Shown piece after piece: positions 30,521-63,257 of a stretch of 64,000 nt of DNA (position 1 is its first letter; every line of letters begins with the position of its first letter). The notes beneath the pieces are model-generated. The model was not told where the DNA came from and made no database searches. It was given only the letters and a program-made list of their open reading frames with translations. The position numbers and the translations under genes were made by a program. Source of the stretch: Botryllus schlosseri (lineage: Eukaryota); contig CM119385.1 of assembly GCA_051294905.1 (NCBI GenBank), positions 8,184,001 through 8,248,000 of the forward strand, given 5' to 3'.

Positions 30521-31483
30521 CTAGTACTCAATATCATCTCTAAAAGGAAAGTACTTTGACTTTCTGCTGTTTTCGAATTCGCAGTACCTCGTGTCCGTAT
30601 TCAAGCTTGTCAGAAATTCCATGTCTTTGTCTGAAATCGTGAAGTCACAGGATGCAAAATTCTCCTCAATTCGCTCAGGTGATACTGACTTGGGAATTGC
30701 TATTATGCCTCTCTGCATTATCCAACGTAGTATTATTTGAGCTGGAGTTTTGTTGTATTTGGAAGCGATGGCACAAATTCTTTCATCCCCCATCACTTTT
30801 TTGATATTCTTTGCCCCACCCAACGAACGGTAAGCGGTTAAAGTTACTCCGTGTTCCTCGGAAAACTGTCGAAGTTTTTCTTGATTCAGGAATGGATGGA
30901 GTTCTATTTGGTTGGTCACCGGTTTAATGGTGCAAGATTTGAGGATACTGTCAGTTTGCTTGCTGTTGAAATTCGACAGACCAATGCTTCTGGCCAAGCC
31001 AAGTTTTACACATTCTTCCATTCCTCTCCAAGTCTCGACAGGATCTACATCGTCGAGTGCATCGAGGCCGTCTGGAGTAGTTTTGCTTTTCAGGCAGACT
31101 TGTCTTTCAGTCTCAGGAATAGTTGACCAGGGGGAGTGGACCAGGTAAAGGTCAAGATAGTCTAATTTCAGATTTGCCAGAGACTCCTTCAAGGCCGGAA
31201 CTACCATATCTTCTTTATGGTTGGTAGACCATAATTTGCTAACGACAAAAATATCCTCCCGCGTAATGGAACCATCATCTATCTTCTCGTTAATGGCACG
31301 TCCCACCTCTTCCTCATTCTGGTACTTGAATGCAGTGTCGATATGCCGGTATCCGACTTCGATTGCCTGCTTTACCGATCTATGCGCGTCTTCCCCGCTT
31401 GCCAGCCACGTTCCAAACCCCAACAACGGGCATTTTACGCCGTTATTAAAAAGAACGGACATAGTACTTCCAGCCTTTGCCAT
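30521..31483 (-). CDS. Aldo-keto reductase family 1-like, single coding exon, about 320 aa
   Basis: Uninterrupted ORF with GFGTW, GYRHIDTAFKYQNEEEVG, FVVSKLW, DYLDLYLVHSP, IGLSNFN, NQIELHPFL and IPKSVSPERIEEN; catalytic D/Y/K/H tetrad present. The ORF track start at 31555 is a TTG; real ATGs are at 31483 or 31462. Confidence 0.95.
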   Translation of the reverse strand: MAKAGSTMSVLFNNGVKCPLLGFGTWLASGEDAHRSVKQAIEVGYRHIDTAFKYQNEEEVGRAINEKIDDGSITREDIFVVSKLWSTNHKEDMVVPALKESLANLKLDYLDLYLVHSPWSTIPETERQVCLKSKTTPDGLDALDDVDPVETWRGMEECVKLGLARSIGLSNFNSKQTDSILKSCTIKPVTNQIELHPFLNQEKLRQFSEEHGVTLTAYRSLGGAKNIKKVMGDERICAIASKYNKTPAQIILRWIMQRGIIAIPKSVSPERIEENFASCDFTISDKDMEFLTSLNTDTRYCEFENSRKSKYFPFRDDIEY

Positions 31484-31710
31484 GTTGCAGCAGTTGGAAT
31501 GTTGAAGATTCCCTCCAGTACTCCAGCTAGCAGCTACCAATTTCGGTTTTATCAAAATCCATGTTGTATTTTTACCTCTGCAAAGATCGCCGAGGCGTTA
31601 AGCTGCTGCAATCATAGCAGCGTTTTTAGCAATTACGCCTATTGCAAGAATTATCACGTGACAAACACACTGTTTTGATTTTGGGATCGTGCGCAGACGG
31701 AAATAGCTGT
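31484..31710. promoter_or_regulatory. Putative bidirectional promoter between AKR and GRHPR, with palindromic E-box TCACGTGA (31654-31661)
   Basis: Only 227 bp separates the divergent ATGs at 31483 (-) and 31711 (+), and a TCACGTGA palindrome lies within it. Confidence 0.6.
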
Positions 31711-47100: not shown

Positions 47101-49072
47101 AGCGTTGTCGCGCAACCGATTGAGCAATTGAGCATTCACACTCTTATACTCTCGTGCGCACTTGCTCCTGAGCTGCTCAGACGGTGGCGTCACAATACCA
47201 AACTCCGTTACAATGCAACATCCGAGGCTGATTTTGGTGGATTCCAGGACCACGATCACAATATAATTAATATTTTCGCAAGCAGTACCGCGGTAGCGTT
47301 CGATTCATAACCTATTTATCAAATTTCGCGCTAGGCAAGCCGGTCAAAAATTACCGTCAAAGTGCCTTCAGCCAAATGGAAAGTGTGGCATAGACTAATT
47401 TCCCTGAGCCGTGAGATTTGCTTGTGTCCACACTCGCGCTGCTGGATTCTGCGTGTAGGAGTCAGCGTTAATAGTGTCTAAGCTGATATAACACTTGCGC
47501 ACCTCCTGATCGCAGTAGACCGGAAACGGCACGGACCCCGGCTTCTCTTGAAGAAAATACACCCCGCTGTAGGTTCCGCCTTTACGTAAGATATCCGCGC
47601 AGTCTAAATCGTGAGTCCTTCATATATTAGGGTCATTAGCGACATATCAAAAAAGCAATACAAACGTACCTTTACCGATAATTTCGCTGGGACACTCTAC
47701 TGTTGAGTTCCCGCGGCAAAGACTTACGATCGAATTCATTCTGTTGCGTAGTAAGTGTATTTGCTCGATAGCTTGGCCGTGACCTCGCATGACTTCGGCG
47801 GTGATGGCCCCATTGTCTTTTACCAGGGATGTTATTTGCTCTGCTTTCTCCGATAACTGTTGATAATCGATGTTCCTTTCTCTTAACTCATCTAAATCGT
47901 AGACATCAAATTAAAATTGGGTTCGCGGGCCGGAGTCAAATTCAAAATTAGCGCGGACTCTATGCCTGAGTTCAAACTATCTTGAGAGAACAGGAGTGGA
48001 ATGTTAGCTGTGTCATCCAGGTTTGAACAGTAGAGACATACTGCGCCAATCGCTACTTGAATGCTACGTATTTGTTTGCGGAGTGTAGTCAGAGTGGTCG
48101 GGACGTTTTTATGCTACATAGCCGACAACGTTGCTTTCGGTACGATGTTGCGTTTAACTCTTACCGTTACGAAGGCCAATGCACCACCGACATTTCCTAA
48201 AATCACTATAACAGACTCGGAAAATTAAATCATTGGATAATTTGAATAATTAGAGCGAAATACCGGTAAGCTAGTTCTAAGCTAATTTGTGAAATGTTTC
48301 AAAGCTCTAATTTTATTATTATTATTATATTATTATTATTTTATTAATATTATTATTTATTATCTATTTTATTATCAAATATCTGCTCTTCCTCAAATTG
48401 GTACAGTAGAACTGTATGCAGCGCGAAACTACAAGGTGGGTGTACAGAGTTGCCATTATCGTTCTTATATGAGGATGAACTCTGATTTGATACGAACTGA
48501 ACTTGATTTTCGTTGCATTTCTTTCTAATAAAGATTTTAATTACATTTCCAATATTTTTCGAATTACATAATTCTAATTGCACTGTAATTTGAAAAATGG
48601 GTAGCAATAATTCAATTCTATAATCCAATTGGAAAAAGCTGTTTTTTTTTCTAGATGCCCAGCTCTGCACGGTATGTGCGATTCTTCAGCGTTATAGGGT
48701 GACAAGTTTTCCATCTTTGTACCTGCTGTCCGCGATTCAGGGTCACTCGCAGGCTGGCGCAGCTTATCCAGATCCTTCCGTATTTTTTTGATGTTCGCCG
48801 TCAAGTGAGACAGCCGCACTTTGGTATCGTGTTCGAACGCTTCTTGCGCTTTTGCGGTGTGGCACGATGTCTCGGCGAAAATCTGCGATTACATTACAAG
48901 CCTACATCGTTACGAGAAAACTCACTGTACTTTCTATCTACATAGATGGGTCAAGATTGCGATCTAGATTCGAACGACAGCTGTCCATTTTTAGGTAATG
49001 CACACTTACTCTGTTACTCCACAAAAGATGTAAGATTAAGAAAAGCCCCGAAACGTGCATCTTCGTAGTCAT
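41200..49072 (-). CDS. Secreted fibrinogen-like protein (signal peptide + coiled coil + FReD), 'gene C', beta/gamma-chain-like
   Basis: Exons 49072-49010, 48882-48723, possible unresolved exons near 48200-47950, 47891-47670, 47603-47503, 46636-46425, 45881-45673, 45155-45062, 41317-41200. Signal peptide [24 protein letters not shown]; [21 protein letters not shown]; [50 protein letters not shown] and [27 protein letters not shown]. Confidence 0.9.
41759..42276. mobile_element. hAT-type MITE (GACTCGAGTC family)
   Basis: TIRs CAGGGTTGTAA / TTACAGCCCTG; TSD GTAAACAT / GTAAACAG. Confidence 0.85.
42375..43523. mobile_element. hAT-type non-autonomous element with a nested repeat
   Basis: TIRs CAGTGGTTCTCAACC / GGTTGAGAACCACTG; TSD GCCTAAGA / GTCTAAGA; CCGGTCCGC subterminal motifs; contains a copy of the 15646-type repeat. 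Confidence 0.8.
43741..44218. mobile_element. MITE-like element rich in GGATT/GGATTAGG repeats
   Basis: Ends CAGAGATGAGC / GCTCATCTAT; clustered GGATTAGGATTTGGATTGGATT motifs at both ends. Confidence 0.6.
44215..44544 (+). mobile_element. 5'-truncated LINE (CR1/L2-clade-like) ORF2 C-terminal fragment
   Basis: [50 protein letters not shown] resembles the post-RT C-terminus of CR1/L2 LINEs. Confidence 0.7.
48309..48375. repeat. (ATT)n microsatellite
   Basis: Directly visible imperfect ATT run. Confidence 0.85.
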
Positions 49073-50990
49073 CGCCGCAAACTGTATTGTATGCTATATT
49101 ATGTCACGCCATGTCTGCCTTGTTTAGCTACATGATTGAGTGTCAATATTTGATAATGTGTAGCTGCTACGTTATCGTTCTTAGTCAGTAACAAAGAAGT
49201 TTTGGGATTGTTATTTACAAATTTGTCAGTTTGTCTCCGAGGTGGTCAGTACTTCTACTTTATTGCAGTACTCAAGTAGGTTTTGTGAATGCCATATTTG
49301 CATGGATTTTCATCACGTTTACGAGTAGAAATATTATAGCAATGAAATTCAGTTCGATTTGTTATTAACAATTTCATCATTTCCATACACCACAAGACTG
49401 CGATATAACGAACAGATAGGAAGGTGTCGAATCGAGTTTGAGTAGTCTTTGAAATCAGACCCCACCTGCCCTATAGGCGATGTAAAAAAGGAGGCACGCA
49501 CACTGAAGGAAATGTGAAAGAATATAATACAAAAAGACAAGCGGCAAAATGAGGTGGCATACGGAAGACGAAATCGGTTATGTCAGGTCGTGGTCCGGTA
49601 AACCTGAGGGATGACTAGCATTTAATCAGTAGAAATTGCTTGTATTTCGACTTGGATGTGGACATGCTCGACGACTGTCGGATAGCCTGCGTGATACTGT
49701 TCCACACTGCAGCAACCGGGATGTAGCACATCATGAAAATTGCAACTATTTGTCATTGTTATATAATAGAAAAGTTCCATCTCGCAAACTCGAAAACAAA
49801 ATCACAGGCGATGGACAAAAAAGTGTCCGACCTATCGGCCCAACATAACTTCTACAGACTACTTAGTACTCTTCAGATCGCATTTTCTACTTCAACCTCA
49901 AGTAGTTTTTTTCAATGCCATGAAATTCGCTACTTCTACTTGTAATTGAGCAGGGATTCACTTCACTACATCTATAAGTACGTGTCCTCAACGACTATAT
50001 TTTACCACCTCTGGTTTTTCTATCAGAATGTGTATGTATGACACGATAAAATGGATACAATATACATGTCCGACAACATGTTACTCAAACCAATTTTCTG
50101 TGAATCTCGATTCTATACCAGCGAGAAAAAGCGTTGGCCTATGGATGTCTTGATTTTCTCACAAATTCAGGTTTTCCGCGCCATTTTGATGTTCCTTCTA
50201 TTGTGCTCGGGCACACTCACTGTCAAATTGATTGTATGAATATATTTAAGAGATAGTTCAGTCCGAATTCTAAATATATCTCTACAATTACGTATAGTAA
50301 GTCCGAATATATACTTCTACGATCTTAGCGAAAAGACAGTGCATTTACACCATTGTGCAACCACTGATATACGTTTTCCACTGCCTGCTGGCACCGCTCT
50401 GTTCGTGAATCAATACACCAAAATAGATTTACTTCCCGTAAAACAGTGGTTCTTCACATTTACTAGGATATTGAACTAATCTGTAAGCGTTCTGCGTTCC
50501 CAACTTTTTGTCTGGTCACAAAAACAAAAATATACCATACTACACATCTATAATAATATATCACTATAGGATAGGCCTACTGGCGCACAAAATGAACCGT
50601 GCCTCAACAACAACGTCAAAAGAATAAAATCATTGAGACATGATTTTGACACATAACAAACGATTATGATTAGTATTTACTGCAGATCAGTGTTACTTCT
50701 ATGCTGCATGAGTCGTGTGTGTGTCCTGGCGTCCATCGAACCCCTGAGACTGACTCAGCGAACCCGTGGGGCTCGTGTGAACGCCGGTGAAGAACCACTT
50801 CTATAAAGCCGATTTCTGGCTACACGCTATCCTGAGCACCTTTAACAATATGCGCACTTCACGGTATAGCCTATAAATTTAGAACTTTCAGCTGGGATGT
50901 TCGCGATCTAGATATCATTATGATTCTTCGATCTTCGTGTGCCATGATCGCTACATATATTTACATATTGGACAACAAATAAACGCTTCG

Positions 50991-53900
50991 TTAATTTCGG
51001 TGATATCTTAAAATTCGTCTTTGTTTTCTCCTGCGCGCCGAACTTCTCCTCCACCGCCTTGAAAGTCGCCTTATGATTTTCATATCATTCATCTTTCGTC
51101 GTCTCGCAATCTCTTGCCTGTCCGGTAGAATAGGATTTTGATCCGGCCTGAAAGCAAGCGGCCTGACTTTCATCGTCGATCCTTTGAGCGATTCGTGGCA
51201 TCCTCGCCACGTATTCCAGATGATCCCGTCGCTTACTGTGTGAAATTTATGGTATTTGGAATGTATAAGATTAGTCGAACAGTCTATTTGCACTGTACCT
51301 TTCGCAGTGCCGACAGGAAGCTGTTGTGTAGTACGTTTACGTATGCCATTCAAATTGGCCGAGAAACAGTCGCTGTACCACCAACCCCCTCTTCCGTGAT
51401 CTGAAATGAATTGTTGGGTTCAAGACCACTCGAAAATCCCGCAGGATATGGTATCAGCCGTGAATCGATAAAAAATAAATACACGTGAAAATTTTTGGCA
51501 GGCCCGCGCGAGTTGTTGATATTTTGACATTTGATGGAGAGTTGCCGAATGCCCACCCTCGTAGTCTTTTATACAACCATTGGTGGTCAGTGTAGTCAGC
51601 GATCTCAAGTATAGAACTTTATATACTCGATTACAAGAAGAAATATATATTTCACACATGAAAGGGATGCAATGTTACCTCAAATTAGTAAAACCATGAG
51701 TAGTCGAAAAACATGCCCACTGGAGTACGCCCTGGTATAGGTAGGCAAAATCTACTTCAGTACTGTGAAAACGTAGAAGTACTTCGTTTCTGACCACATA
51801 TGTTTACGGCAATAGTTACTTTGTTGTGAAAAACTTCTGATAATATAAAGATATTACATCAGCCAAGGTATAATTATTCGATTACCGGCACAATTTCCCT
51901 GAGTGCGGTCGTTGTCATGGTCTTTTGTGGTAAACTCTACCCCGCGATGACCAGCTGCGACGATATTCGGAGTTGTGTTGTTGGAACATACGCTCTGTGT
52001 GTTTGTTCCTAAGGCATCGCCCACGTTGCCCGCTGGGTCCGCTAAATATCCATCAATGGCTTTTAGCTTGTATCCATTCATTTCATCATCGACGGCGAAA
52101 TATCTTTAAAACCAATGCTGCACGATAATACGAACATATTTGCCGTAACATGCAATGACTTAACATACCTATATATCGCAAATCTATCCACACCATCCCA
52201 CGATAACAAGTCGATTTTCAGTTCTGTCAAGTTTTGTCGTGTCGACCTGCGTCAAATTTGTAGATGAATGCATCGTATATTCTTGTGTTGGAAAGATTCG
52301 CTTACATGTGAATGTATTCATTTCCTATCCAGTATTCCCAGTTTTTGTTATGTTCCTTCTGCCCGAAACCCCATTTGTAGTCCTCCCAGTTGCGGTCAAA
52401 ATCTACCTGCCCGTTGTATCGTCGCTGGATAACTGTCCAGCCTCCACCGCTGTCCTTCATGTCGCAGTAGACCTTCGAAAGGTCGTTGTCGGAGTTACAA
52501 TTTCACGTCGACGCGATTTTCAAAACGGACTTATCGATACTCCATGAGTAAAACATGTACGGATTTCAATAATACAGTACACAGCACGGCACGACACGGT
52601 GCAATTATTGCTAAAACCCAGGGTTGTAACCAAGTCACATGGTTCCGAGTCACGAGTCAATCTTACTTTTGAGGTTTTGACTCGAGTCAAGTCGAGTCAT
52701 TTTCAGTTCATCACCGAGTCGAGTCCGAGTCCAAGTCCCCGTTTAAAGGGTCAAGTCCGAGTCATGGTGTTATGACTCGAGTCCGAGTCCGAGTCACAGT
52801 ATTGAAGTCACGTTCAACTCATGTTTTCAATCCTGCTTGGGTGATGTCGAATTCCGATGCTACAGATCGACAAGACAGGCCAATATGATAATTCTACTAA
52901 TCTTAGAACTTAAAATCAAATATCTGTCTTGTCATGTCAGTCCGATATACATCACAAATATAAGCATTTAGTTTTTTTTTCGATCACATCGACGACAGCT
53001 CATAAATAGCTGATGGAGCCAACGAATTCACGTCTACATGCTATCTGATATAGAACCAACGAATTCGCGTCTAGATACCAGCTAATAGAGAATCAACAAA
53101 TGCATGTTTATGTCTGGAGAGGTATTTTCACCAGGCCAGCATGCTGTAAAAGCGTGCATGCAGCTATGTGCAGTGACAAAAGAACGGATACATTTTGATA
53201 TTACTAAAGGTTTTCCCAATTGCATTACAGACTACATCGCAGTTACAGCATTGGAGAAATAATTGTACAACGGAGCTGTTCAAAATCATTTTTTCAAATT
53301 TTCCGAATACTTCTTAAAATTGTACATAGTAATTGTACATAGTAAAGTCATGCTCATGTCACATCGATAGGATTATTTATCAGCCTAATGCCTGTGCGCA
53401 ATGCATCACTGAGCTATATAAACACCGCACACCTGCTGGTATCCAACCGTTTATGGTCACGACTCCATTTCCAATATGAAAATGTTCCGTGGCCCAACTC
53501 AAAATTTGATAGGCTGATTACTAATTAAAGGTCGGCACATTTGCCCAGACTTATCCACGGCATATTTGGAAACTGATTTGATTGCATTCAACATCTTCAC
53601 GAACCCAACAATAAAGGCAACTTACCCCCAGGTTTAGAACCTCTATCTTTGAATAAAGCATTGAAACGGCGTAAACCGACTCTACGAATATACCGTTATC
53701 TTGTATTTGTAATTGCGATTACAATTAGACTTATTTCTGTAAATGAATGTTATTTTTATTTATCTTTGATCGCAGTTTTTGCGAGGGTGGTAGTCCCCAT
53801 ATTAAAGCCGACACATGTGATACTAAATCGCGCGTAGCGCGAACAAAAATTTCACGTAGCATAAATCTACCCAAACATAATATTGTTTATATGGATTTAG

Positions 53901-55609
53901 GAAAAAAATACGAGCTTGCTTCAAAATTCCAGACAGTTAGGCATATTATCGAAATTCATCCGGGATGCAGTTTTAACAGTGAAATTCCGGACATGTCCGG
54001 GAAATTCCTGACGTCTGGCAACCCTACCTTAGAATATACCCACCTCTAATGAATACACGTTCCAATGGTGCACTAGATGCAGGAATGGACAAGCATTTTT
54101 GAACCACACTGAAGAGCTTCAAATCCACACAAGAGCTTATCAGTCTAGCTCTTCCAAGCACTTGACCATCTGAGTCATTGCATTGGCTCTAATTGAACTT
54201 TGCTTCGATTGTTTGCTTGTATAATAGAAAAGTCTTGAGTACATTGATTGCGGAGGATCTATTACACCTTTATCACTGGATTATTTTGTGCAGTGCATTG
54301 CTAATATGTACCATTGTCTGTTGTTTTTACGGCCGCATATCTGATATCAGACGAGTGCATCGGAAGCAGTGGTGACAAATAGCGATGGCGGCAGAATTCG
54401 TCAGATGCGTTGATCTAGCCATTACGATTTGCAAATTTCTTCATCTTCAAGTCATATAAAATAAGCCGAGTCAATGACTTGGGTCGAGTCATGCGTAATG
54501 ACTCGAGTACAAGTCGAGTCAATCCAAATATTGACTCGAGTCGACTCGAGTCATTTTCCCATTTCAAGAAAGTGACTCGAGTCAAGTCGAGTCACAAAAA
54601 AATCGTGACTCGAGTCGAGTCATGACTCGAGTCATTACAACCCTGCTAAAACCTATTAATTATCTTAGCCATATAGGCCCCTACTGCTATCTTTATTCAT
54701 TTATGCTTCGAGAGGTATAATACTTCATAGGTTTCAGTAAGTTCTAAAGAAGATATATATTTTGAGTTCAGTAATAATTCCGTGTGCTCAATCACATACT
54801 TTGATTAGTCTGTTTGATCCCATTGGACGAATGAAGTAGAAACCATTCTTTCTACCGCCTTTGCTGTGGATTTCGGCGCAATTTCTCCCAGTTAAAACCG
54901 GAATTCTTTTGTCTCCTCGTGCGAATTTTTCTCGGTAAGCACGACTCTTACAGGAATAGTCCAGGGAAAGGGATTCGACCTGCGAAATACTAGCTATGTT
55001 AATCATATCGAGCGACATCTGCTGCGTCATACACAACTTACATTCGCAGCTTTGATTGCAGCGTGAAGTTCCTTGTTGAGAGTAGCTGTGCCGGCGATAT
55101 CAACGTCCGAAATTACTGTATCGGTCTTTCTACTCAACCTTATAACGTCTGCCAATTCCTTCTTTCTTTTCCGGTAGCTTTCTGATACATTGAGCGCATT
55201 TGTATGAATTCAATGTGGCTGATGTCATTTTCAATTCCAGTACCGGCTGATGTTTGAATCTGTTTGTGAGTGTTCCTAACGTTATCAAGATCTATCATTG
55301 CTGCCTTTACTCTGGAGTTCAATAGCGCCTTCTTTTCCACCTGTATCTTATGAAGGAGTTCCTCAGTTGGGCATGTAGAGTTCTGAAGATCGTACCTAAT
55401 GCAAAAATACCCCTATGCTTGTCAATTACTTATCAATGTAATTACCCATCTTAAATTCCCACAAAACTCTTGTCCGCTGCTTACTTGAAGAAAGCGCGCC
55501 GTTTCAAATAGCTGAAACAGATGTTACATACTAAATTTCTACCCGAAAATGCGGCATTTTACGTAATGAAATAGCTGTCACTTACTAGTAATAAGAGACA
55601 CATTTCCAT
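50991..55609 (-). CDS. Secreted fibrinogen-like protein (signal peptide + coiled coil + FReD + Arg-rich tail), 'gene B', alpha-chain-like N-terminus
   Basis: Exons 55609-55586, 55511-55446, 55382-55244, 55181-55042, 54979-54800, 52472-52306, 52246-52169, 52103-51886, 51400-51299, 51235-50991, all phases consistent. [21 protein letters not shown] signal; FCGNLRWNSTCPT; [12 protein letters not shown]; [18 protein letters not shown]; EYWIGNE; FTTKDHDND; [15 protein letters not shown]; [21 protein letters not shown]. Confidence 0.9.
52619..54645 (-). mobile_element. 2.0-kb deleted hAT transposon, likely parent type of the GACTCGAGTC MITEs
   Basis: TIRs CAGGGTTGTAA / TTACAACCCTG; perfect TSD CTAAAACC; contains a transposase remnant. 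Confidence 0.85.
54027..54130 (-). pseudogene. hAT transposase C-terminal dimerization domain remnant
   Basis: Reads [34 protein letters not shown], matching the h[17 protein letters not shown] motif; followed by a TAGGGTTGCCAG element end. Confidence 0.75.
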
Positions 55610-56569
55610 TCTATCAAATATTTTGAATTTCTATTTCTCTGAACTGCGTTAATGTCGTGGCAAATAAATAATTCTTACGAAGAGATCAACAAAGATTAGG
55701 TCTTATACGTTCATTATGAGACATGAACGCAAATATTTTCGGAAGTTATCTTTACTGTGGATTTTAGAGTACGGGATTGTTTGTTCCATTCTACGCAGCA
55801 TTCTTTCCGATGACATTTACATGCTGACGTGCTACGTGAAACTGCAAACTAGTGCAATCTGTCAACACATAGTGGGCGCAAAGTCAAAAGATTGAATCGA
55901 CATCTTTTGATTCATCTCATGTCTGTTTTGTCATAATCAAAATGTACGAATCCAGAGGTTTGATTTTACGATACTATTACTATTACATCTTTTTGTTACA
56001 TACTTTGTTGCGCCGACCGCCGTTAGCAGGCGATATGTACAAACGTAAGACCTTGGTAGCTTCCGCACCCTATCCAACGGCCACTTGTAAATGAATATAA
56101 CTTTTTTAATTACACGAGCTTCCGGAGCTCTGCTCCTTCATCAGGTGTTAAAGCGACAGTAACGCAGAAGAGCAATCTTTTTGTTAGTGATTGTTGTTCA
56201 CTCACTGACATATAGTGGCTTTTTAATTCAGTGTTCTTACTATTTCGCTATATAGGTTGATGTGTCCTGTCTGAATCGTAATGGTCTCAGCGTCTTACTA
56301 ATTATCTGAATAGAATCTAGGAAGAACCGATAACAAGAAATTGCATTCGCATATACATGATGATACTATTGAACAGGCATAGCAATGGCAGATGAATGTG
56401 GAGTTCATCATTGAATACCCCAGGCATCGCCATCATCATTCGCTGCAGTATTTGTATATTTACTCGTAATCCAAAATCTTTATATGTAGGCTATGCATAT
56501 GAGAGAGTAGAATTATGAGGTCAGGATACAGGATCTTGTATTTTTTGCTTAGCTGCTGGACTGTCCATT

Positions 56570-58053: not shown

Positions 58054-61000
58054 TTACGATCTCCCATCGAAACCATAAGGGCGCAGCTTAATTTCTGTTT
58101 TTCGTAAAGAATATTTTCTTCCCCTCCATGATGGCCATATTATTCCCGTGGGTTGTAACCGCGGGTCGAAAGTACCTGGTAATAAATGTACTCGCCTAAT
58201 AACAATATCCAGCAATAGCAATTTTACCACAATTAATTACCTTCATGATAAAATCCATTCAGGTTCGCCCCCTGACATGAGTCGGCCCACCAGCCTTCGA
58301 ACGTATTCAGACAAGATTGCGTCAAGTGCAACTTTTTGTCCCGCGAAGAAAATTTCGCACGAGTTTGTGGTCCTGAAATTCTGAAGAACAACATCGGAAT
58401 GTTTGCGCTTGGTTGATTGGGTCGATGTCTATCGCGACCCGAGTTGTCATCCATAGAGGTAGAGCTCGTTTCACTGTGATGGTGCATCTGCACCGGTATC
58501 CGATATAGTGTTTATATGTCCAAGCACGAATAGGTATCATATAGTAAAGGGCTATATATGTGATCACAAGTATTAGTCAACACTTCTAGCAAATTGTATT
58601 GCATAGATATTTTTGATAATGATTCCGCGGTATATTCACGATAACGCGGTGGATAATGCTGATTTCAGGGTGTCCTGTTTGTAGATTGGCAACATAAGAA
58701 ATTACCTTACATCATAGAATCAGAGCAGTTGCTCACATCTTGTTCGTAGTATGACAGTTGAACGGTGTAAAGGTGCTCGGCAGAATTGACTTTGAAGTAG
58801 GAGTACTGCGCCACTCTAGTTACGTCATCCCAGTCTGTCATGACGATGCGAATGGTCTGAAACCCAGCTTTGCCAATCTCAACAAGATTCTCATTTCCCA
58901 GCCAGAACTCTGTTGAACAGGACGCCTGGCCAAAACCTAAACAGAAAAAGGCAAGTTTAATTCTTATGCGATCAAAATAGCATAAACGGGGACACTTGCA
59001 CCCTTTTCCGCGAAAATTTGAAATTTTAAAGATTGTGGTGCCTTTCGACCGATTAGGCAATCTTCACATTGCTCTGAGCTCGAACTTTGATTGTGCCTGT
59101 ATTTCTGATAGGGTATTTCCAGAAAACGAGCAGAATCGTCTTGATAATATGGTTTGTGCCGGCGCTACAATTTAAATTATTCCTGACTTCGACCTGGCAG
59201 AATGATTCGAGTGCTCGAATCCGAATCGAGTATATTAATTGTAACGATTCGAGTCGGAAACTGAGAGACGTTTTTCTCAAGCACTGAAACTAAACGCCCT
59301 TTTCTCTAAGAGTTTTATTATCTACGAAAATTACATAGTTTCGATGCTTTTTTCCCACCGTGGAAACTTTGAAACCTTCGATTAATCCGGTCGTAAGATC
59401 CAAAACATGTAGGACACGTCTACTCGCATTATAGTGCAAATAGCAATTTTCTGAAGAAGTGATCAGTGTAGGGTTGCATTTAAAACAAAAATGAATTCAA
59501 GCATACATGTTTGAAACATGGCCCGTTTTACGACGTGCTTTTATGGTTTGTTTTTTGTTTGTTTTTTGGCCATGACGTAACAAGTCTTTAAATGGTGACG
59601 TCAGTGTGAAGTGACATTGACTATTGAAAATGCATTGTAAGGATGACTCCTTTGACGAAAAAGGCTTCCGTCACCTGCCTTAAACGGCCCAAAAAATATA
59701 TTTGAACCAATCCATATCGCATACGGCGACTATATTGGGTGCAAATCGTCCGCGTAGGCTCATACTACCAGTTTTTTTTTTAAAGTATTTACACAACTAT
59801 TCGTAATCGAATCGTTCATACACGCTCGGTTTTTCTCATCCCTAATCGTGATTCGTTCTGAAATTGGTAACAACTGCGGACTATGACGAGGTTCGATTCA
59901 TTACCGGCTGCGTACTCTGCCCAGGTCCTGTTAAAATCCACGGAACCGTCAACCCGTCTCTGAACAACAGTCCAACCACCTCCCGAATCCTAAAAACGTT
60001 AACCAAAATTAAAGAAATATGAACCCGATCGACGATTCATCGTATTACATCCATGTCGCAGAAAACGTAGAACGAGTTCACGGGCTTTCGCGGAGTGATC
60101 CGATATATGCCGCTGTCTTGATATGAAATATTATTGTGTTAGATTCGATCGTCCATCACTGACCAATGAATATGACAACCAGCCTTCTTCAAGTTTCCTA
60201 ATCAGACTAGCTAGACCCAGTGGTTCCCAACCTGTTTCGACTCTTCGCCCCCTTATCCAGCTCGACACAAATCTATAAACGGGAAGTTCATTCACCTGCT
60301 GTGTTTATTCAATTGCGATCGTTGTAGAATTGACTAAAAAGAGTGATTTTTTCCGAGTAGGTGCTCGTAAAACCGGTTCCCGGGTCTACTTTCCGTTGAG
60401 TTGACCTTTTTTGCTTCATATCTCACAAGACGTTCTAAAATTATCGCCCGCCCCTATCGCCCCTAAGGTATTTTCTCCCCTTGTTTCTCAAAATCGCCCA
60501 CTGGGGGCGATATTGTCCACGTTGGGAACCACTGAGTTAGCGCGAAATGTCGGTTATCTAATTTGTGAAAAGTGTCTATGCTCTAATTTTAATTCTAATC
60601 CAACTTCTGGTTTTCCTGAAAATGCTACAGGACAACTGCATAGTGCGCCATTCCCATGCTTACGAGAATGAATTCTGAGTTGATATGAACTGAACTTGAT
60701 TTTCGTTATATATATTTCTAATTATTTATTTCTAATTATTCTATGTCCTAGTTTTTGCGAACTCAGTAATTATAATCCTAATAAAATTTGGGAAAATTCT
60801 AATATATTTTGGAGAAGCTGAATATTTTCTAGTTGTGGAACCCTGACTGGATGTGCTACCTCGATGTCCCTTGCTGTGAAGCTCAGCGCAGCTCTTCGCC
60901 TGCGGCGCCTCGAACAGCGGACACACCGCGCCATCTTCTGACTCGCGAATCATAGTGGCCGACGCTCTTTGGGCCGCTTTCAAGCATAACGTGTCGTCGT

Positions 61001-62074
61001 CGCCACAGCCACCGTTGACCCGCGACCCCGGCGGTTCCACGTTTTGCGGCGTTATTTCTAAACGGAATATATCCGGTAAAAGATCACGCCGGTCGGCGGC
61101 ATATCGATAAGATAGTTACGGTCGTCGTCGTCGTTACAGAAGTTCTGGCAATGATGGCGGATGGTCGCGAGTTCGCGTAGGAGATCTGTGTACATAAGCA
61201 ATTCATAACTTTATATAAATTGGAAATGGTGAAAGCATGAGTAATGCTCATTGAGCATACGCTTAGCAGGGATGATAATTTTGAGGGAGAGTTTAATAAT
61301 CAAGTGTCAGCGGTGACGTAGTGAACGTAGATGACGTCACAATCTTCAGTCCGCGGCTATACTTGGCTGGGCGCGAGATGATTTTCACGCATATACACTG
61401 TACAGTTGTAGATGGAGGTGGTCTTTAACGGAGTACTCCACCTATACGGAGTACTTGAGTAGATTGTTCCTACTTGCACTAACTTACTCAAGTGCTTCAC
61501 TTCTTCTTATCAGTTTTTATGGGAAACTAATTCCCTTTTGTATCGTTTGGATATTATTTGCGTACTATTTATGACTGAAGTAGTCATAACTACGAAATTG
61601 CCCTTGTGTCGCGGTTACTGAATTTGATTTTTGAGAATTACACCTATTTGTTGTTTTACTAGTCGCTTCTCGTTAGTCGCGAATATGCACGATGCAATTT
61701 AGAATGTCGCCACATATTATTAACTGTTAAAAGACTGCGACCCCACCAGCAAACCTACCTTTTGAAACTATACTTTCTTGAGTACTTTTCATGTCGTGAT
61801 TTTGTAGGCTTACTTTCTCGTGAAGCAGTTTCGACATGTCTTAAAAATCGTAACTTTACTCGTAAATGAAAACAGATTTGGGGACTAACTTCTACTTCTA
61901 CTTCTACTTGGGTATCAACGTCGACTACTTTAACCAGCTCTGGTTCTATGTCCATACTTTGTAATTCTGAGTTCAGCTGGTCTGTCTTCCGTCGTACAGC
62001 GTCGTATTGACGTTTTTGGACCGATACTTCTGCAGAGAGCTTTACCATGGCGTCCCGTAAAGTGGAATTCTCAT
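58054..62074 (-). CDS. Fibrinogen-like protein (coiled coil + CxxxC + FReD), 'gene A'; 5' exons unresolved and probably further upstream
   Basis: Exons 62074-61958, 61185-61120, an exon ending at 60860 (acceptor uncertain), 60116-60049, 59989-59905, 58936-58711, 58380-58241, 58175-58054. Motifs [78 protein letters not shown] and [23 protein letters not shown]. Confidence 0.85.
60218..60534. mobile_element. hAT-type MITE; second copy at about 40155-40500
   Basis: TIRs CAGTGGTTCCCAAC / GTTGGGAACCACTG; shared CGACTC..CCCC..AGCTCGACACAAA and GGGGCGATAT blocks; TSD not clear. Confidence 0.7.
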
Positions 62075-63257
62075 CTAAAAAGTAAAATAATTCGGACTAA
62101 AATTCACGGATACACGACTGCGCACTATATTTTCTCGAACTAAATTATCTCGCTTTACCCTAATTATAGCTCATTGATATCATATTGAGGTATATATCGC
62201 GTTGAGCATAATACCTTTGCGGTGATATCGCCCTCTTTACGATGAGAGCTGCTTTGCTTAGTATCTAAATGATTTGGCGATCTTCCGGTATACATAATGA
62301 GCATATCTTCCCAAGATATAAAACGAGTACACAGTATGGACATTGGACAGATAGCTGGAATCCGGATACTGTAAATCGGTTGTGCGCCTAATGCATCCGC
62401 TTCACAAATTGCCGATAGTCTATCGTTGAAACGCGTCGTCACCTTCGATCTCTTATGTGCCGTAAAAGTATTAGCGTATAATCTGATTGTTGTATTTGTA
62501 TTTTGTACGTACGATGACTGCAGGTAGTTGATTTGTGTTGACTTCAGGTGATAAAATCAATTTTTTTCGGCAGGCACGCACCGAAGTAATCTGCACGTCT
62601 CCTGTAATCGTCAAAGCAAGGGAACGGTCCGAGTACGCGATGCCGAAGACCTGCCGAAGCAATCGACGAACGTGTTCGCCCTACGCAGCCCAACCGGGCC
62701 TCATATGCAACTCCCGCAATGTTGTTCATTCGTAAATATTATTCAATAAACCAGTAAAACCCCCTGTTATTTTCATCTTATCATGGCGTACGAAGCGGCG
62801 CTCTCTCTTTATCTCGCGCACTCGTCAGCCCAGGCTCCCCGCAGCACTACGGAAATTGCTACCTTCGAGAGACGAACCAGCGTCCCGCGTAGCCGCAACG
62901 CATGCAACATTCAACTGCGCCAACTCCTGCACAGTGAATTTAACGTCTTTATACTCCTAGTCGAGGGGGTTGCTTTATCAAACAGAAAGCAAGTAAACGC
63001 TACGAATCGTGGCGCTGTTGAGGCTAGTGTTTCGCGCATCAGTAAACTACGAACATCTTTTTGTTGCTCGTTGGTTGCTTTAGGTTTTATGTACCTATAG
63101 TCCTACTGAATGAGGTGACTTATCAAACGTAAAATCCATATCAACACTAGAGAAGGTACCAGTGGCGCAATCCGAACCTGAAATCCCACTATTCACGCGG
63201 GTCGCATTAGCCCACTGATCTACCGCCTCAGCCTGTTGGTTGCAGTATGTTTTAGGT

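What the first reader, a model, noticed from the sequence alone, without database searches (positions are those of the whole stretch)
55244..55609. Gene B N-terminus reproduces the fibrinogen alpha-chain FCxxxxWNxxCP spacing but lacks a fibrinopeptide and GPR knob
Splicing two tiny exons (24 and 66 bp) and a 63-bp intron gives [21 protein letters not shown]|[23 protein letters not shown]. The F-C-x4-W-N-x2-C-P spacing equals that of human FGA (FCSDEDWNYKCP). The predicted mature protein starts about 3 residues before the Cys, so there is no thrombin-cleavable peptide or knob. The gene also carries a FReD, like the alphaE form. Inference: this is an alpha-like chain in a pre-thrombin state.
Basis: partly seen in the sequence, partly recalled or inferred. 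Interest (0 to 1): 0.7.

Follow-up and report, generated by a model that had tools for sequence, protein, structure and literature searches.

The report
Tunicate fibrinogen-like chain, alpha-type N-terminus
The predicted tiny exons are real and open a secreted coiled-coil plus fibrinogen-domain protein, the counterpart of the "full-length fibrinogen-like" protein already described in the sea squirt Ciona; its N-terminal cysteine motif is truly homologous to the fibrinogen knot, but the chain as a whole cannot be called alpha.

Summary
Observation confirmed. Minus-strand exons 55609-55586, 55511-55446 and 55382-55244 have GT-AG introns. Spliced transcript contigs from several studies fit them and extend to a 10-exon, 452-aa ORF: signal peptide, FCGNLRW|NSTCP, about 100 residues of rod, fibrinogen-related domain (FReD), Arg-rich tail.

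The motif is not chance.
- Orthologues in Styela (ECTNIKW|GELCPTEE) and Ciona (QCDSERW|GELCPNEC) keep C-x4-W-x3-CP.
- Among 240 fetched FReD proteins, only these two and three fish alpha chains have it.
- The phase-0 intron three residues before the ring Cys also occurs in teleost FGA and in Xenopus and teleost FGB.

Interpretation partly supported. No fibrinopeptide or knob is present. However:
- The orthologue's rod matches beta (50 bits) better than gamma (28) or alpha (14).
- The FReD tree does not resolve alpha versus beta.
- The second ring Cys is lost (CPTEE), the rod is 12 residues shorter than beta's and 14-15 shorter than the orthologues', and the pocket acids are replaced.
- Gene B's own rod gives no significant Fib_alpha-type hit; its orthologues score 27-28 bits, just under Pfam's cut-off.

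This is the tunicate fibrinogen-like protein of Doolittle (2012) in another tunicate: a new member of a known kind. The scan's reader also noted the surrounding three-gene cluster on this window (s1-268370).

The parts
55610..55647 (-). 5'UTR of gene B, transcribed at least to 55647; in-frame TAG at 55633-55631
   Evidence: Depth arithmetic on contig X14 record 10; upstream codons
55586..55609 (-). Exon 1, coding part (24 nt): MEMCLLLL, the start of the signal peptide
   Evidence: GTAAGT donor; Ciona B-like has the same tiny first exon
55512..55585 (-). Intron 1 (74 nt, GT..AG)
   Evidence: removed in X14 record 10 by depth arithmetic
55446..55511 (-). Exon 2 (66 nt): end of the signal peptide, then QEFCGNLRW; ends in phase 0 after Trp30
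   Evidence: same layout in Ciona B-like (67 nt, ends ..QCDSERW) and in teleost FGA exon 2 (ends ..PFCTDDDW)
55383..55445 (-). Intron 2 (63 nt, GT..AG), phase 0, three residues before the ring Cys. Its position is shared with FGA, FGB and the Ciona B- and C-like genes. It is retained in one contig.
   Evidence: (X14 record 10 ends at 55382; X1 record 6 unspliced)
55244..55382 (-). Exon 3 (139 nt): NSTCPTEE... and the start of the helical rod
   Evidence: Junction 55181/55244 listed in three runs; translation
55368..55466 (-). The motif F24-C25-x4-W30 | N31-x2-C34-P35, interrupted by intron 2
   Evidence: codon coordinates; conservation
54800..55181 (-). Exons 4 (55042-55181) and 5 (54800-54979): the rest of the rod, the single distal Cys133, and the start of the FReD (Cys157)
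   Evidence: Junctions 54977/55040 and 55181/55244; alignment to beta
50991..52472 (-). Exons 6-10 (52306-52472, 52169-52246, 51886-52103, 51299-51400, 50991-51235): FReD and Arg-rich C-terminal tail, with the stop at 50993-50991
   Evidence: Spliced contigs and raw RNA reads; PF00147 hits; model check

Best explanation
The three small exons open a transcribed gene for a secreted 452-aa fibrinogen-like chain. Its parts are a signal peptide, a two-cysteine N-terminal segment (FC-x4-W|N-x2-CP), a rod of about 100 Pro/Gly-poor residues, a fibrinogen-related domain and an Arg-rich tail.

It is the orthologue of the middle ('B') gene of a three-gene FReD cluster conserved in the ascidians Ciona and Styela. 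This is the tunicate 'full-length fibrinogen-like protein without thrombin sites' that Doolittle described in 2012. The genome is therefore most likely a tunicate, closer to Styela than to Ciona.

The N-terminal segment is homologous to the fibrinogen central knot. Cys25 and Cys34 align with beta65 and beta76, and their C-x8-C spacing is that of the alpha chain. They are separated from the rod by the same phase-0 intron as in FGA and FGB.

Inferred mechanism. After signal cleavage near Gly21/Gln22, the two cysteines tie parallel chains together at the start of a coiled-coil rod. The partners are either more copies of the same chain or the products of the two neighbouring genes. This displays several FReD heads.

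There is no fibrinopeptide and no Gly-Pro-Arg knob, and the pocket acids used by beta are replaced. The protein therefore cannot be switched on by a thrombin-like cut. It probably acts constitutively as a multivalent recognition or adhesion molecule.

It cannot be assigned to alpha rather than beta or gamma. Its knot spacing is alpha-type and its rod is most beta-like. This copy is also derived: the second ring Cys and the distal ring are lost, and the rod is 14 residues (two heptads) shorter than Styela's.
For: Shown:
- Splicing and expression. One search gives spliced contigs from runs of three studies plus junction reads in raw RNA-seq. All nine introns are GT-AG and the ORF is intact.
- Orthology. 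blastp gives 41.7% identity over 441 aa to Styela XP_039256271.1 and 35% over 397 aa to the Ciona protein, the latter starting exactly at Cys25.
- The N-terminal 150 aa alone score 35 bits (E 2e-7) against Styela and 25 bits (E 1e-3) against Ciona.
- In the FReD tree, gene B groups with Styela at 100/98 and then with Ciona at 99/95.
- The gene order C-B-A on one strand is the same in Ciona. The three-exon N-terminal layout is the same too.
- Homology to fibrinogen chains. The blastp alignment to human beta runs from Cys34 = beta Cys76 to the C-terminus, 32% over 406 aa.
- The orthologues hit Pfam Fib_alpha at E 3e-6 and 7e-6.
- hhalign of the three tunicate rods gives 90.7% probability (P 1e-6) against the beta rods, collinear over 101 columns. 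Against fish alpha it gives 82% (P 1e-5), starting at the first Cys.
- Motif specificity.
- Shared phase-0 intron.
- No knob. Pocket residues beta E397/D398/D432 are H/G/S in gene B.
- Prior description of the Ciona protein: PMC8037105, reference 86.

Inferred: signal cleavage, disulfide pairing, oligomer state and function.
Against: - Gene B's own rod is not significantly similar to a beta-rod profile: 4.3 bits, matched by 123 of 3000 shuffles.
- No Fib_alpha hit on its exon pieces, and none over the cut-off anywhere in the genome in six frames.
- A crude heptad count is not above shuffles, p about 0.2.
- The CxxxC rings that define fibrinogen chains are absent (CPTEE; a single Cys133).
- The exon 1/2 and 2/3 junctions were inferred from a contig end and depth arithmetic. 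They were not printed as joints. One contig retains intron 2.
- The signal peptide is short and atypical (hydrophobic core MCLLLLLF) and was not tested with a predictor.
- Doolittle's paper itself could not be read. Which Ciona gene it describes is therefore not verified.
Confidence: 0.75

Rival explanations
1. Gene B is the true orthologue of vertebrate FGA. On this view the tunicate C-B-A cluster corresponds one-to-one to FGG-FGA-FGB, as the reader's cluster note s1-268370 proposes. The alpha, beta and gamma chains would then have separated before tunicates and vertebrates split, and gene B would be alpha before it gained fibrinopeptide A and the knob.
For: - The knot spacing C-x8-CP with W at +5 is exactly alpha's. 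Among 240 FReD proteins it occurs only in alpha chains and the tunicate B genes.
- Gene B even shares F-C and W-N-S with fish alpha.
- Exon 2 ends at the same Trp as FGA exon 2.
- hhalign against alpha starts at the first Cys without a gap.
- The three clustered Ciona genes each carry a CPxxC ring. The upstream one reads GSYCPSPC with 110 residues to a CQRYC ring.
- The AU test does not reject a B+FGA clade, p 0.41.
Against: - The orthologue's rod is far closer to beta (50 bits) than to alpha (14).
- The FReD follows the rod directly, with no alphaC-like region.
- In the FReD tree the tunicate B and C genes are each other's sisters at 81/90, which suggests duplication within tunicates.
- B+FGB is equally unrejected, p 0.32.
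- No gamma chain could be fetched, so the three-way test was not run.
- No PLRG1-type flanking synteny was found.
Confidence: 0.15
2. The alpha-type spacing is convergent. Gene B descends from a beta/gamma-like full-length chain that duplicated inside tunicates. The two-residue difference from beta (C-x8-C against C-x10-C) would be a small deletion that happens to give alpha's spacing.
For: - The rod and the FReD junction are beta-like.
- Shark beta also has W three residues before the ring Cys (NEDWGVLCPNGC, close to Ciona's SERWGELCPNEC).
- B and C are sisters in the FReD tree.
Against: - The spacing and the Trp are conserved in three tunicates that are only 35-42% identical overall, and in alpha chains from fish to human.
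- The Phe before the first Cys matches alpha in gene B.
- A knot equally ancestral to all chains explains the data as well.
Confidence: 0.2
3. The motif is a chance resemblance in an ordinary coiled-coil FReD protein (angiopoietin-, ficolin- or FGL-like) with no special relation to fibrinogen.
For: - Taken alone, the 12-residue match is about 20 bits by my own BLOSUM62 estimate, which is not significant in a pairwise search.
- phmmer of the 38-aa peptide finds no solved fibrinogen chain.
- One FReD exon scores as well against angiopoietin-2 as against gamma.
Against: - The orthologues conserve the motif.
- The intron is shared with FGA and FGB.
- The alignment to beta is collinear and starts at the ring Cys.
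- The orthologues hit Fib_alpha.
- The motif is absent from all other sampled FReD proteins.
Confidence: 0.03

Closest known systems
[quoted passage not shown]
   Same: Signal peptide, C-x4-W|x3-CP knot, rod, FReD. The three-exon N-terminal layout and the phase-0 intron are the same. It holds the same middle position in the same three-gene cluster. It has no thrombin site or knob. Identity is 35% from Cys25 to the C-terminus.
   Different: Ciona keeps the CPNEC ring, the Cys before the FReD, two of the three pocket acids and a beta-length span (137 residues against 122 here). It has no Arg-rich tail. The paper itself could not be read, so I do not know which Ciona gene or genes it covers.
Styela clava XP_039256271.1 'fibrinogen gamma chain-like' (P0004, residues from about 202 to 660)
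   Same: The nearest relative: 41.7% identity over 441 aa, 54% in the FReD. Its knot is ECTNIKW|GELCPTEE, with the same loss of the second ring Cys. It has an Arg-rich tail and altered pocket residues.
   Different: Styela's rod is 14 residues longer, and it keeps the Cys that aligns with beta201. The database model is fused to the upstream FReD gene.
Vertebrate fibrinogen A-alpha chain (FGA), N-terminal knot
   Same: The [F/I]-C-x4-W-x3-C-P spacing and the phase-0 intron right after the Trp. Exon 2 ends at that Trp.
   Different: Alpha has fibrinopeptide A and the Gly-Pro-Arg knob in exon 2, a further upstream Cys, a complete CPSGC ring, a distal ring and the alphaC region. A FReD is present only in the alpha-E form, after alphaC. 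Rod similarity to the tunicate chain is the weakest of the three chains.
Vertebrate fibrinogen B-beta chain (FGB)
   Same: The best overall vertebrate match. The alignment is collinear from ring Cys76 to the C-terminus. The intron before the ring is the same. The rod-FReD junction is similar: IPVVSGKEC..RKGG against [13 protein letters not shown].
   Different: Beta has C-x10-C spacing, fibrinopeptide B and a knob, both rings, FReD insertions, and the pocket acids E397/D398/D432.
FGL1, FGL2 and angiopoietin-type coiled-coil FReD proteins
   Same: A secreted N-terminal Cys and coiled-coil multimerisation region followed by one FReD. No protease activation. This is the likely functional analogy.
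   Different: None of the sampled members has the C-x4-W-x3-CP knot. None aligns through the rod; their matches cover the FReD only.

Membership tests
Fibrinogen chain family (Pfam Fib_alpha rod + Fibrinogen_C) | C-terminal fibrinogen-related domain (PF00147) | tested here: met
   Exons score 58, 23 and 20 bits against PF00147. The canonical FReD cysteines and the DxDxD calcium motif are present.
Fibrinogen chain family (Pfam Fib_alpha rod + Fibrinogen_C) | Rod matching the Fib_alpha profile (PF08702) at the gathering score | tested here: inconclusive
   Gene B exon pieces give no hit. No hit exceeds the cut-off anywhere in the genome in six frames. The spliced N-terminus scores 4.3 bits against a beta-rod HMM, not significant. 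The orthologues score 27.8 and 26.8 bits against the 29.9 cut-off, E about 1e-6. Profile-profile comparison gives 90.7%. The spliced protein itself could not be handed to the Pfam tool.
Fibrinogen chain family (Pfam Fib_alpha rod + Fibrinogen_C) | N-terminal disulfide ring Cys-Pro-x-x-Cys | tested here: not met
   Gene B reads CPTEE. Glu stands in the beta Cys80 column, as in Styela, whereas Ciona has CPNEC.
Fibrinogen chain family (Pfam Fib_alpha rod + Fibrinogen_C) | Distal CxxxC ring, about 111 residues after the first ring | tested here: not met
   There is only one Cys (133) between the knot and the FReD. The span from the ring Cys to the first FReD Cys is 122 residues against 134 in beta.
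Fibrinogen chain family (Pfam Fib_alpha rod + Fibrinogen_C) | Phase-0 intron three residues before the ring Cys | tested here: met
   Gene B W30|N31. Xenopus and teleost FGB ..EEL|G(T/V)LCPTGC. Teleost FGA ..DDDW|WSKCPSGC. Ciona B-like and C-like.
Fibrinogen chain family (Pfam Fib_alpha rod + Fibrinogen_C) | Thrombin-released fibrinopeptide and Gly-Pro/His-Arg knob | tested here: not met
   Only about 3 residues lie between the predicted signal cleavage site and Cys25, with no Arg-Gly site. Ciona also has none. Signal cleavage was not tested with a predictor.
Fibrinogen chain family (Pfam Fib_alpha rod + Fibrinogen_C) | Knob-binding pocket acids (beta E397, D398, D432) | tested here: not met
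   The alignment columns give H, G, S in gene B; N, S, T in Styela; G, D, D in Ciona. That these three residues form the knob-binding pocket is from my own knowledge; their positions in P0062 were checked.
Fibrinogen alpha chain (FGA) specifically | Knot spacing [F/I]-C-x4-W-x3-C-P | tested here: met
Fibrinogen alpha chain (FGA) specifically | Rod closest to alpha; alphaC region after the rod | tested here: not met
   The orthologue's rod scores 50 bits against beta, 28.5 against gamma and about 14 against alpha. The FReD follows the rod directly.
Fibrinogen alpha chain (FGA) specifically | FReD groups with the alpha-E FReD | tested here: inconclusive
   The tree leaves it unresolved. AU p is 0.41 for B+FGA and 0.32 for B+FGB. 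No gamma chains were in the set.
Tunicate B-type fibrinogen-like chain (Ciona/Styela orthogroup) | Full-length collinear similarity and a FReD clade | tested here: met
Tunicate B-type fibrinogen-like chain (Ciona/Styela orthogroup) | Middle gene of a same-strand C-B-A FReD cluster; the three small N-terminal exons | tested here: met
   Window genes lie at about 60.1-58.0k, 55.6-51.0k and 47.9-41.2k. The Ciona locus L010 shows the same order. The exon layout matches.

The most novel reading that the evidence does not exclude
The three same-strand genes (C, B, A) form a proto-fibrinogen locus that predates thrombin-driven clotting. Each would encode a knot-rod-FReD chain, and the three would assemble into a fibrinogen-like heteromer, with gene B as the alpha-type member. 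Exon 2, which ends at the conserved Trp, would be the exact place where vertebrates later inserted fibrinopeptide A and the Gly-Pro-Arg knob. If so, the three-chain architecture, and not just a single fibrinogen-like chain, existed in the common ancestor of tunicates and vertebrates.
Probability: 0.2. Interest if true: 0.8.

Novelty: new member of a known kind. Interest (0 to 1): 0.45.

Why it matters
How a thrombin-triggered, three-chain clotting protein arose from ordinary fibrinogen-domain lectins is an old question. Tunicates hold the only known non-vertebrate chains that resemble fibrinogen along their full length.

This locus adds a transcribed third example. It pins the homology of the N-terminal knot to an exact shared intron and cysteine spacing. 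It also shows that the knot decays in some ascidians: the ring Cys is lost, the rod is shorter and the pocket is altered.

It gives a concrete, testable picture of where the fibrinopeptide and knob were later added, namely the small exon that ends at the conserved Trp. It also offers a three-gene cluster whose products can be tested for co-assembly. As a single observation it is incremental, because the 'fibrinogen without thrombin sites' idea was published for Ciona in 2012.

Tried and rejected
- I first guessed amphioxus from genome size and GC content. I dropped this once the nearest homologues, the synteny and the roughly 62-nt introns pointed to a tunicate.
- Searching the representative library with FReD exon 8 gave only 5 hits, but one of them was the Styela orthologue.
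- phmmer of the 38-aa N-terminal peptide and of exon 3 against solved structures found no fibrinogen hit.
- Searching the window's own genome with exon 3 and with the Styela rod found only the gene itself, or nothing. No statement about paralogues is possible.
- The crude heptad-periodicity test on residues 35-132 was not above shuffles.
- The homotrimer prediction with three copies of the Styela rod returned no verdict (score 0.00, pLDDT about 44). It counts neither for nor against self-association.
- I tried to enumerate exon chains for an unannotated teleost alpha-like gene. There were too many solutions, so I abandoned this and read the DNA directly.
- I looked for xxxCP-type exon starts upstream of window genes A and C and found none. 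Their N-termini remain unmodelled, and there was no second reads call.
- I tested whether a WD40 gene at about 2-7 kb could be the PLRG1 neighbour of vertebrate FGB. It showed no similarity to the partial Xenopus neighbour and only generic WD40 look-alikes, so the lead was dropped.
- No gamma chains could be retrieved as protein ids, so the alpha/beta/gamma assignment tree is incomplete.
- Doolittle's 2012 paper is not held in the library.
Full report
THE SEQUENCE AND THE SPLICE MODEL

On the minus strand an ATG at 55609 opens a 24-nt coding exon that ends at a GTAAGT donor. After a 74-nt intron, a 66-nt exon (55511-55446) ends at GTAATT. After a 63-nt intron, exon 3 starts at 55382. Phe24-Cys25-x4-Trp30 is the end of exon 2 and Asn31-x2-Cys34-Pro35 is the start of exon 3. 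An in-frame TAG lies eight codons upstream of the ATG.

TRANSCRIPT EVIDENCE

Contigs of three public runs from different studies, and raw reads of one RNA-seq run, were laid on 50900-55750.
- Intron-less contigs and junction reads define the joints 51235/51299, 51400/51886, 52103/52169, 54977/55040 and 55181/55244.
- Record positions give two further joints, 52244/52304 and 52470/54798.
- One contig (X14 record 10, 433 nt, depth 6.96) covers 55040-55181 and 55244-55382, stops exactly at the predicted acceptor 55382 and has 128 further letters.
- The binned depths (3.35 and 2.28) correspond to 78 nt and 50 nt of that contig in the next two bins. That equals exon 2 (66) plus exon 1 with 38 nt of 5'UTR (62).
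- The same arithmetic reproduces the three preceding bins to two decimals.

They were not printed as joints, and I say so. One contig of another run reads through intron 2 (55354-55475), so some unspliced RNA or DNA is present.

With boundaries shifted to canonical sites, all nine introns are GT-AG. The ORF is 452 aa.

WHAT THE PROTEIN IS

The product has these parts:
- a short hydrophobic N-terminus;
- the two-cysteine segment;
- about 100 residues with one Pro and one Gly;
- a single Cys133;
- a complete fibrinogen-related domain, with PF00147 hits on the exons;
- an Arg-rich tail.

A library search with one FReD exon returned a 660-aa Styela clava protein (XP_039256271.1, 'fibrinogen gamma chain-like'). 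A follow-up search found a 662-aa Ciona intestinalis protein of the same name. Both are gene models that fuse an upstream FReD to a gene-B-like chain.

Gene B aligns to the Styela chain over 441 residues (41.7% identity). It aligns to the Ciona chain from Cys25 to the C-terminus (35%) and to human fibrinogen beta from Cys34 (= beta Cys76) to the C-terminus (32% over 406 residues). The N-terminal 150 residues alone are significantly similar to Styela (35 bits) and Ciona (25 bits), but not to human beta.

In a FReD tree, gene B groups with Styela (100/98) and then with Ciona (99/95).

In the Ciona genome the fused model is followed on the same strand by another FReD gene, and its first half matches window gene C. 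The order C-B-A is therefore conserved with this window. Together with the roughly 62-nt introns, this makes the genome a tunicate, closer to Styela than to Ciona. That is an inference.

IS THE MOTIF MORE THAN CHANCE?

Four independent lines say yes.

(a) Conservation. The knot sequences are:
- Styela: ECTNIKW|GELCPTEE
- Ciona: QCDSERW|GELCPNEC
- gene B: FCGNLRW|NSTCPTEE

(b) Specificity. The set includes 63 beta chains, FGL1, angiopoietins, ficolins and many invertebrate proteins. Human alpha reads WPFCSDEDW with the same spacing to Cys-Pro. Chicken alpha reads WPICVDDDW-GTKCPSGC.

(c) Gene structure. The intron after Trp30 is phase 0 and lies three residues before the ring Cys. The same position and phase are found in:
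- Ciona B-like;
- Ciona C-like..CAIG|GSYCPSPC;
- Xenopus and teleost FGB..EEL|GTLCPTGC;
- teleost FGA..PFCTDDDW|WSKCPSGC.
None of gene B's other eight introns coincides with an FGB intron.

(d) Profiles. The orthologues hit Pfam Fib_alpha at E 3e-6 and 7e-6, at 27.8 and 26.8 bits, just under the 29.9-bit cut-off. A profile of the three tunicate rods aligns collinearly with a beta-rod profile over 101 columns (hhalign probability 90.7%, P 1e-6). It aligns with fish alpha from the first Cys (82%, P 1e-5).

IS IT ALPHA-LIKE?

Only in the knot.
- The C-x8-C spacing, the Trp and, in gene B, the Phe and the WNS are alpha's. Beta has C-x10-C.
- The Trp is not exclusive to alpha. Shark beta reads NEDWGVLCPNGC.
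- The Styela N-terminus plus rod scores 50 bits against human beta, 28.5 against gamma and about 14 against alpha.
- The whole chain scores 198 bits against beta and 197 against gamma.
- The FReD follows the rod directly, as in beta and gamma.
- In the FReD tree the tunicate B and C genes are weak sisters (81/90). Relations to alpha, beta, FGL1 and angiopoietins are unresolved.
- AU tests reject neither B+FGA (p 0.41) nor B+FGB (p 0.32). Gamma chains could not be fetched.

I therefore treat the chain as a homologue of the fibrinogen chains that cannot be assigned to one of them.

DERIVED FEATURES OF THIS COPY

- Gene B and Styela have Glu where the second ring Cys stands (CPTEE against CPNEC in Ciona).
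- Gene B also lacks the Cys that aligns with beta201. It has one Cys where a distal ring would be.
- The span from the ring Cys to the first FReD Cys is 134 residues in beta, 137 in Ciona, 136 in Styela and 122 in gene B. That is 14 residues, or two heptads, shorter than Styela. The transcripts leave no room for a missed exon.
- The three pocket acids of beta (E397, D398, D432; positions checked, their role from my own knowledge) are H, G, S in gene B; N, S, T in Styela; and G, D, D in Ciona.
- By itself gene B's rod is not recognisably fibrinogen-like. It scores 4.3 bits against a beta-rod HMM, equalled by 123 of 3000 shuffles. Its exon pieces give no Fib_alpha hit, and no hit in the six-frame genome exceeds the cut-off.

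HOW IT MOST LIKELY WORKS

Shown: a transcribed, correctly spliced gene; orthology to the Ciona and Styela chains; a knot homologous to the fibrinogen knot; and no room for a fibrinopeptide or knob. About 3 residues precede Cys25 here, and about 14 Arg-free residues precede it in Ciona.

Inferred:
- The signal peptide is cleaved near Gly21/Gln22.
- Cys25 and Cys34 staple parallel chains at the start of a helical rod.
- The resulting oligomer presents several FReD heads and acts constitutively, without protease activation, in recognition or cell adhesion.

The last point is what Doolittle suggested for the Ciona protein, according to PMC8037105.

Whether the partners are further B chains or the products of genes A and C is open. 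A homotrimer prediction on the Styela rod gave no verdict.

COMPARISON WITH WHAT IS KNOWN

[quoted passage not shown] It is described as a primitive full-length fibrinogen without thrombin cleavage sites. I could not read the paper itself, so I cannot say whether it covers the B gene, the C gene or both.

The present gene is a new, transcribed member of that kind in another ascidian. I cannot tell whether three details were reported before: the shared intron, the alpha-type spacing and the decay of the rings.

VERDICT

Novelty: a new member of a known kind. Interest is moderate.

The more interesting open reading is that the conserved three-gene cluster is a proto-fibrinogen locus. It is supported here only by leads from Ciona DNA.

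Noticed in passing
L010:8721-10061 (Ciona intestinalis, + strand); window gene C about 58066-62100 (-): The Ciona gene upstream of the B-like chain, read by hand, has a signal peptide, ..NQCAIG|GSYCPSPC, 110 residues, a CQRYC ring, then C-x10-C and the FReD. That is both disulfide rings at almost the vertebrate spacing of 111. The gene caller split it into a 113-aa gene plus the front of the fused model P0006. Window gene C has a matching distal Cys cluster (..CGDDDTLC..C-x10-CAELHSKG, about 61050-60890), but its N-terminus could not be modelled.
   Followed up: partly
L010:15303-16460 (Ciona A-like); window 47650-47910 and 47398-47619 (gene A, -): The downstream cluster gene also has a small exon 2 that starts ..tag|GRLPTCPTTC.., a ring-type motif. 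A helical exon follows, ending in C-x8-CP just before the FReD. Window gene A has the equivalent exon (..[15 protein letters not shown]) and the FReD start [10 protein letters not shown]. All three cluster genes may therefore be knot-rod-FReD chains.
   Followed up: partly
P0004 (Styela) and P0006 (Ciona): In both species the NCBI models fuse the FReD of the upstream gene to exon 2 of the B-like gene, skipping its own first exon. This is either the same annotation artefact twice or real read-through transcription across the tandem pair.
   Followed up: no
   Followed up: partly
window 52473-54799 (intron 5 of gene B): This 2.3-kb intron holds high-copy repeats. Contig depths reach thousands to tens of thousands at about 52520-52843, 53978-54139 and 54464-54787. 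Short GACTCGAGTC-type palindromic units recur at both ends, about 1.85 kb apart. It is probably a MITE-like insertion family transcribed elsewhere in the genome.
   Followed up: partly
window 55354-55475: One transcript contig (run X1) retains the 63-nt intron 2. The retained form would end the ORF after ..[10 protein letters not shown].
   Followed up: no
window 30524-31597 (-): An uninterrupted 358-codon open frame with a full-length aldo/keto reductase domain (PF00248, E 8e-55). It is intronless in a genome whose genes here are split into many small exons.
   Followed up: no
L011:14823-16131 (Synchiropus splendidus, - strand): Between FGB and FGA the teleost locus holds a short (234-aa) called gene with only a Fib_alpha hit and a KCPSGC ring exon. 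It is apparently a truncated alpha-like paralogue.
   Followed up: no
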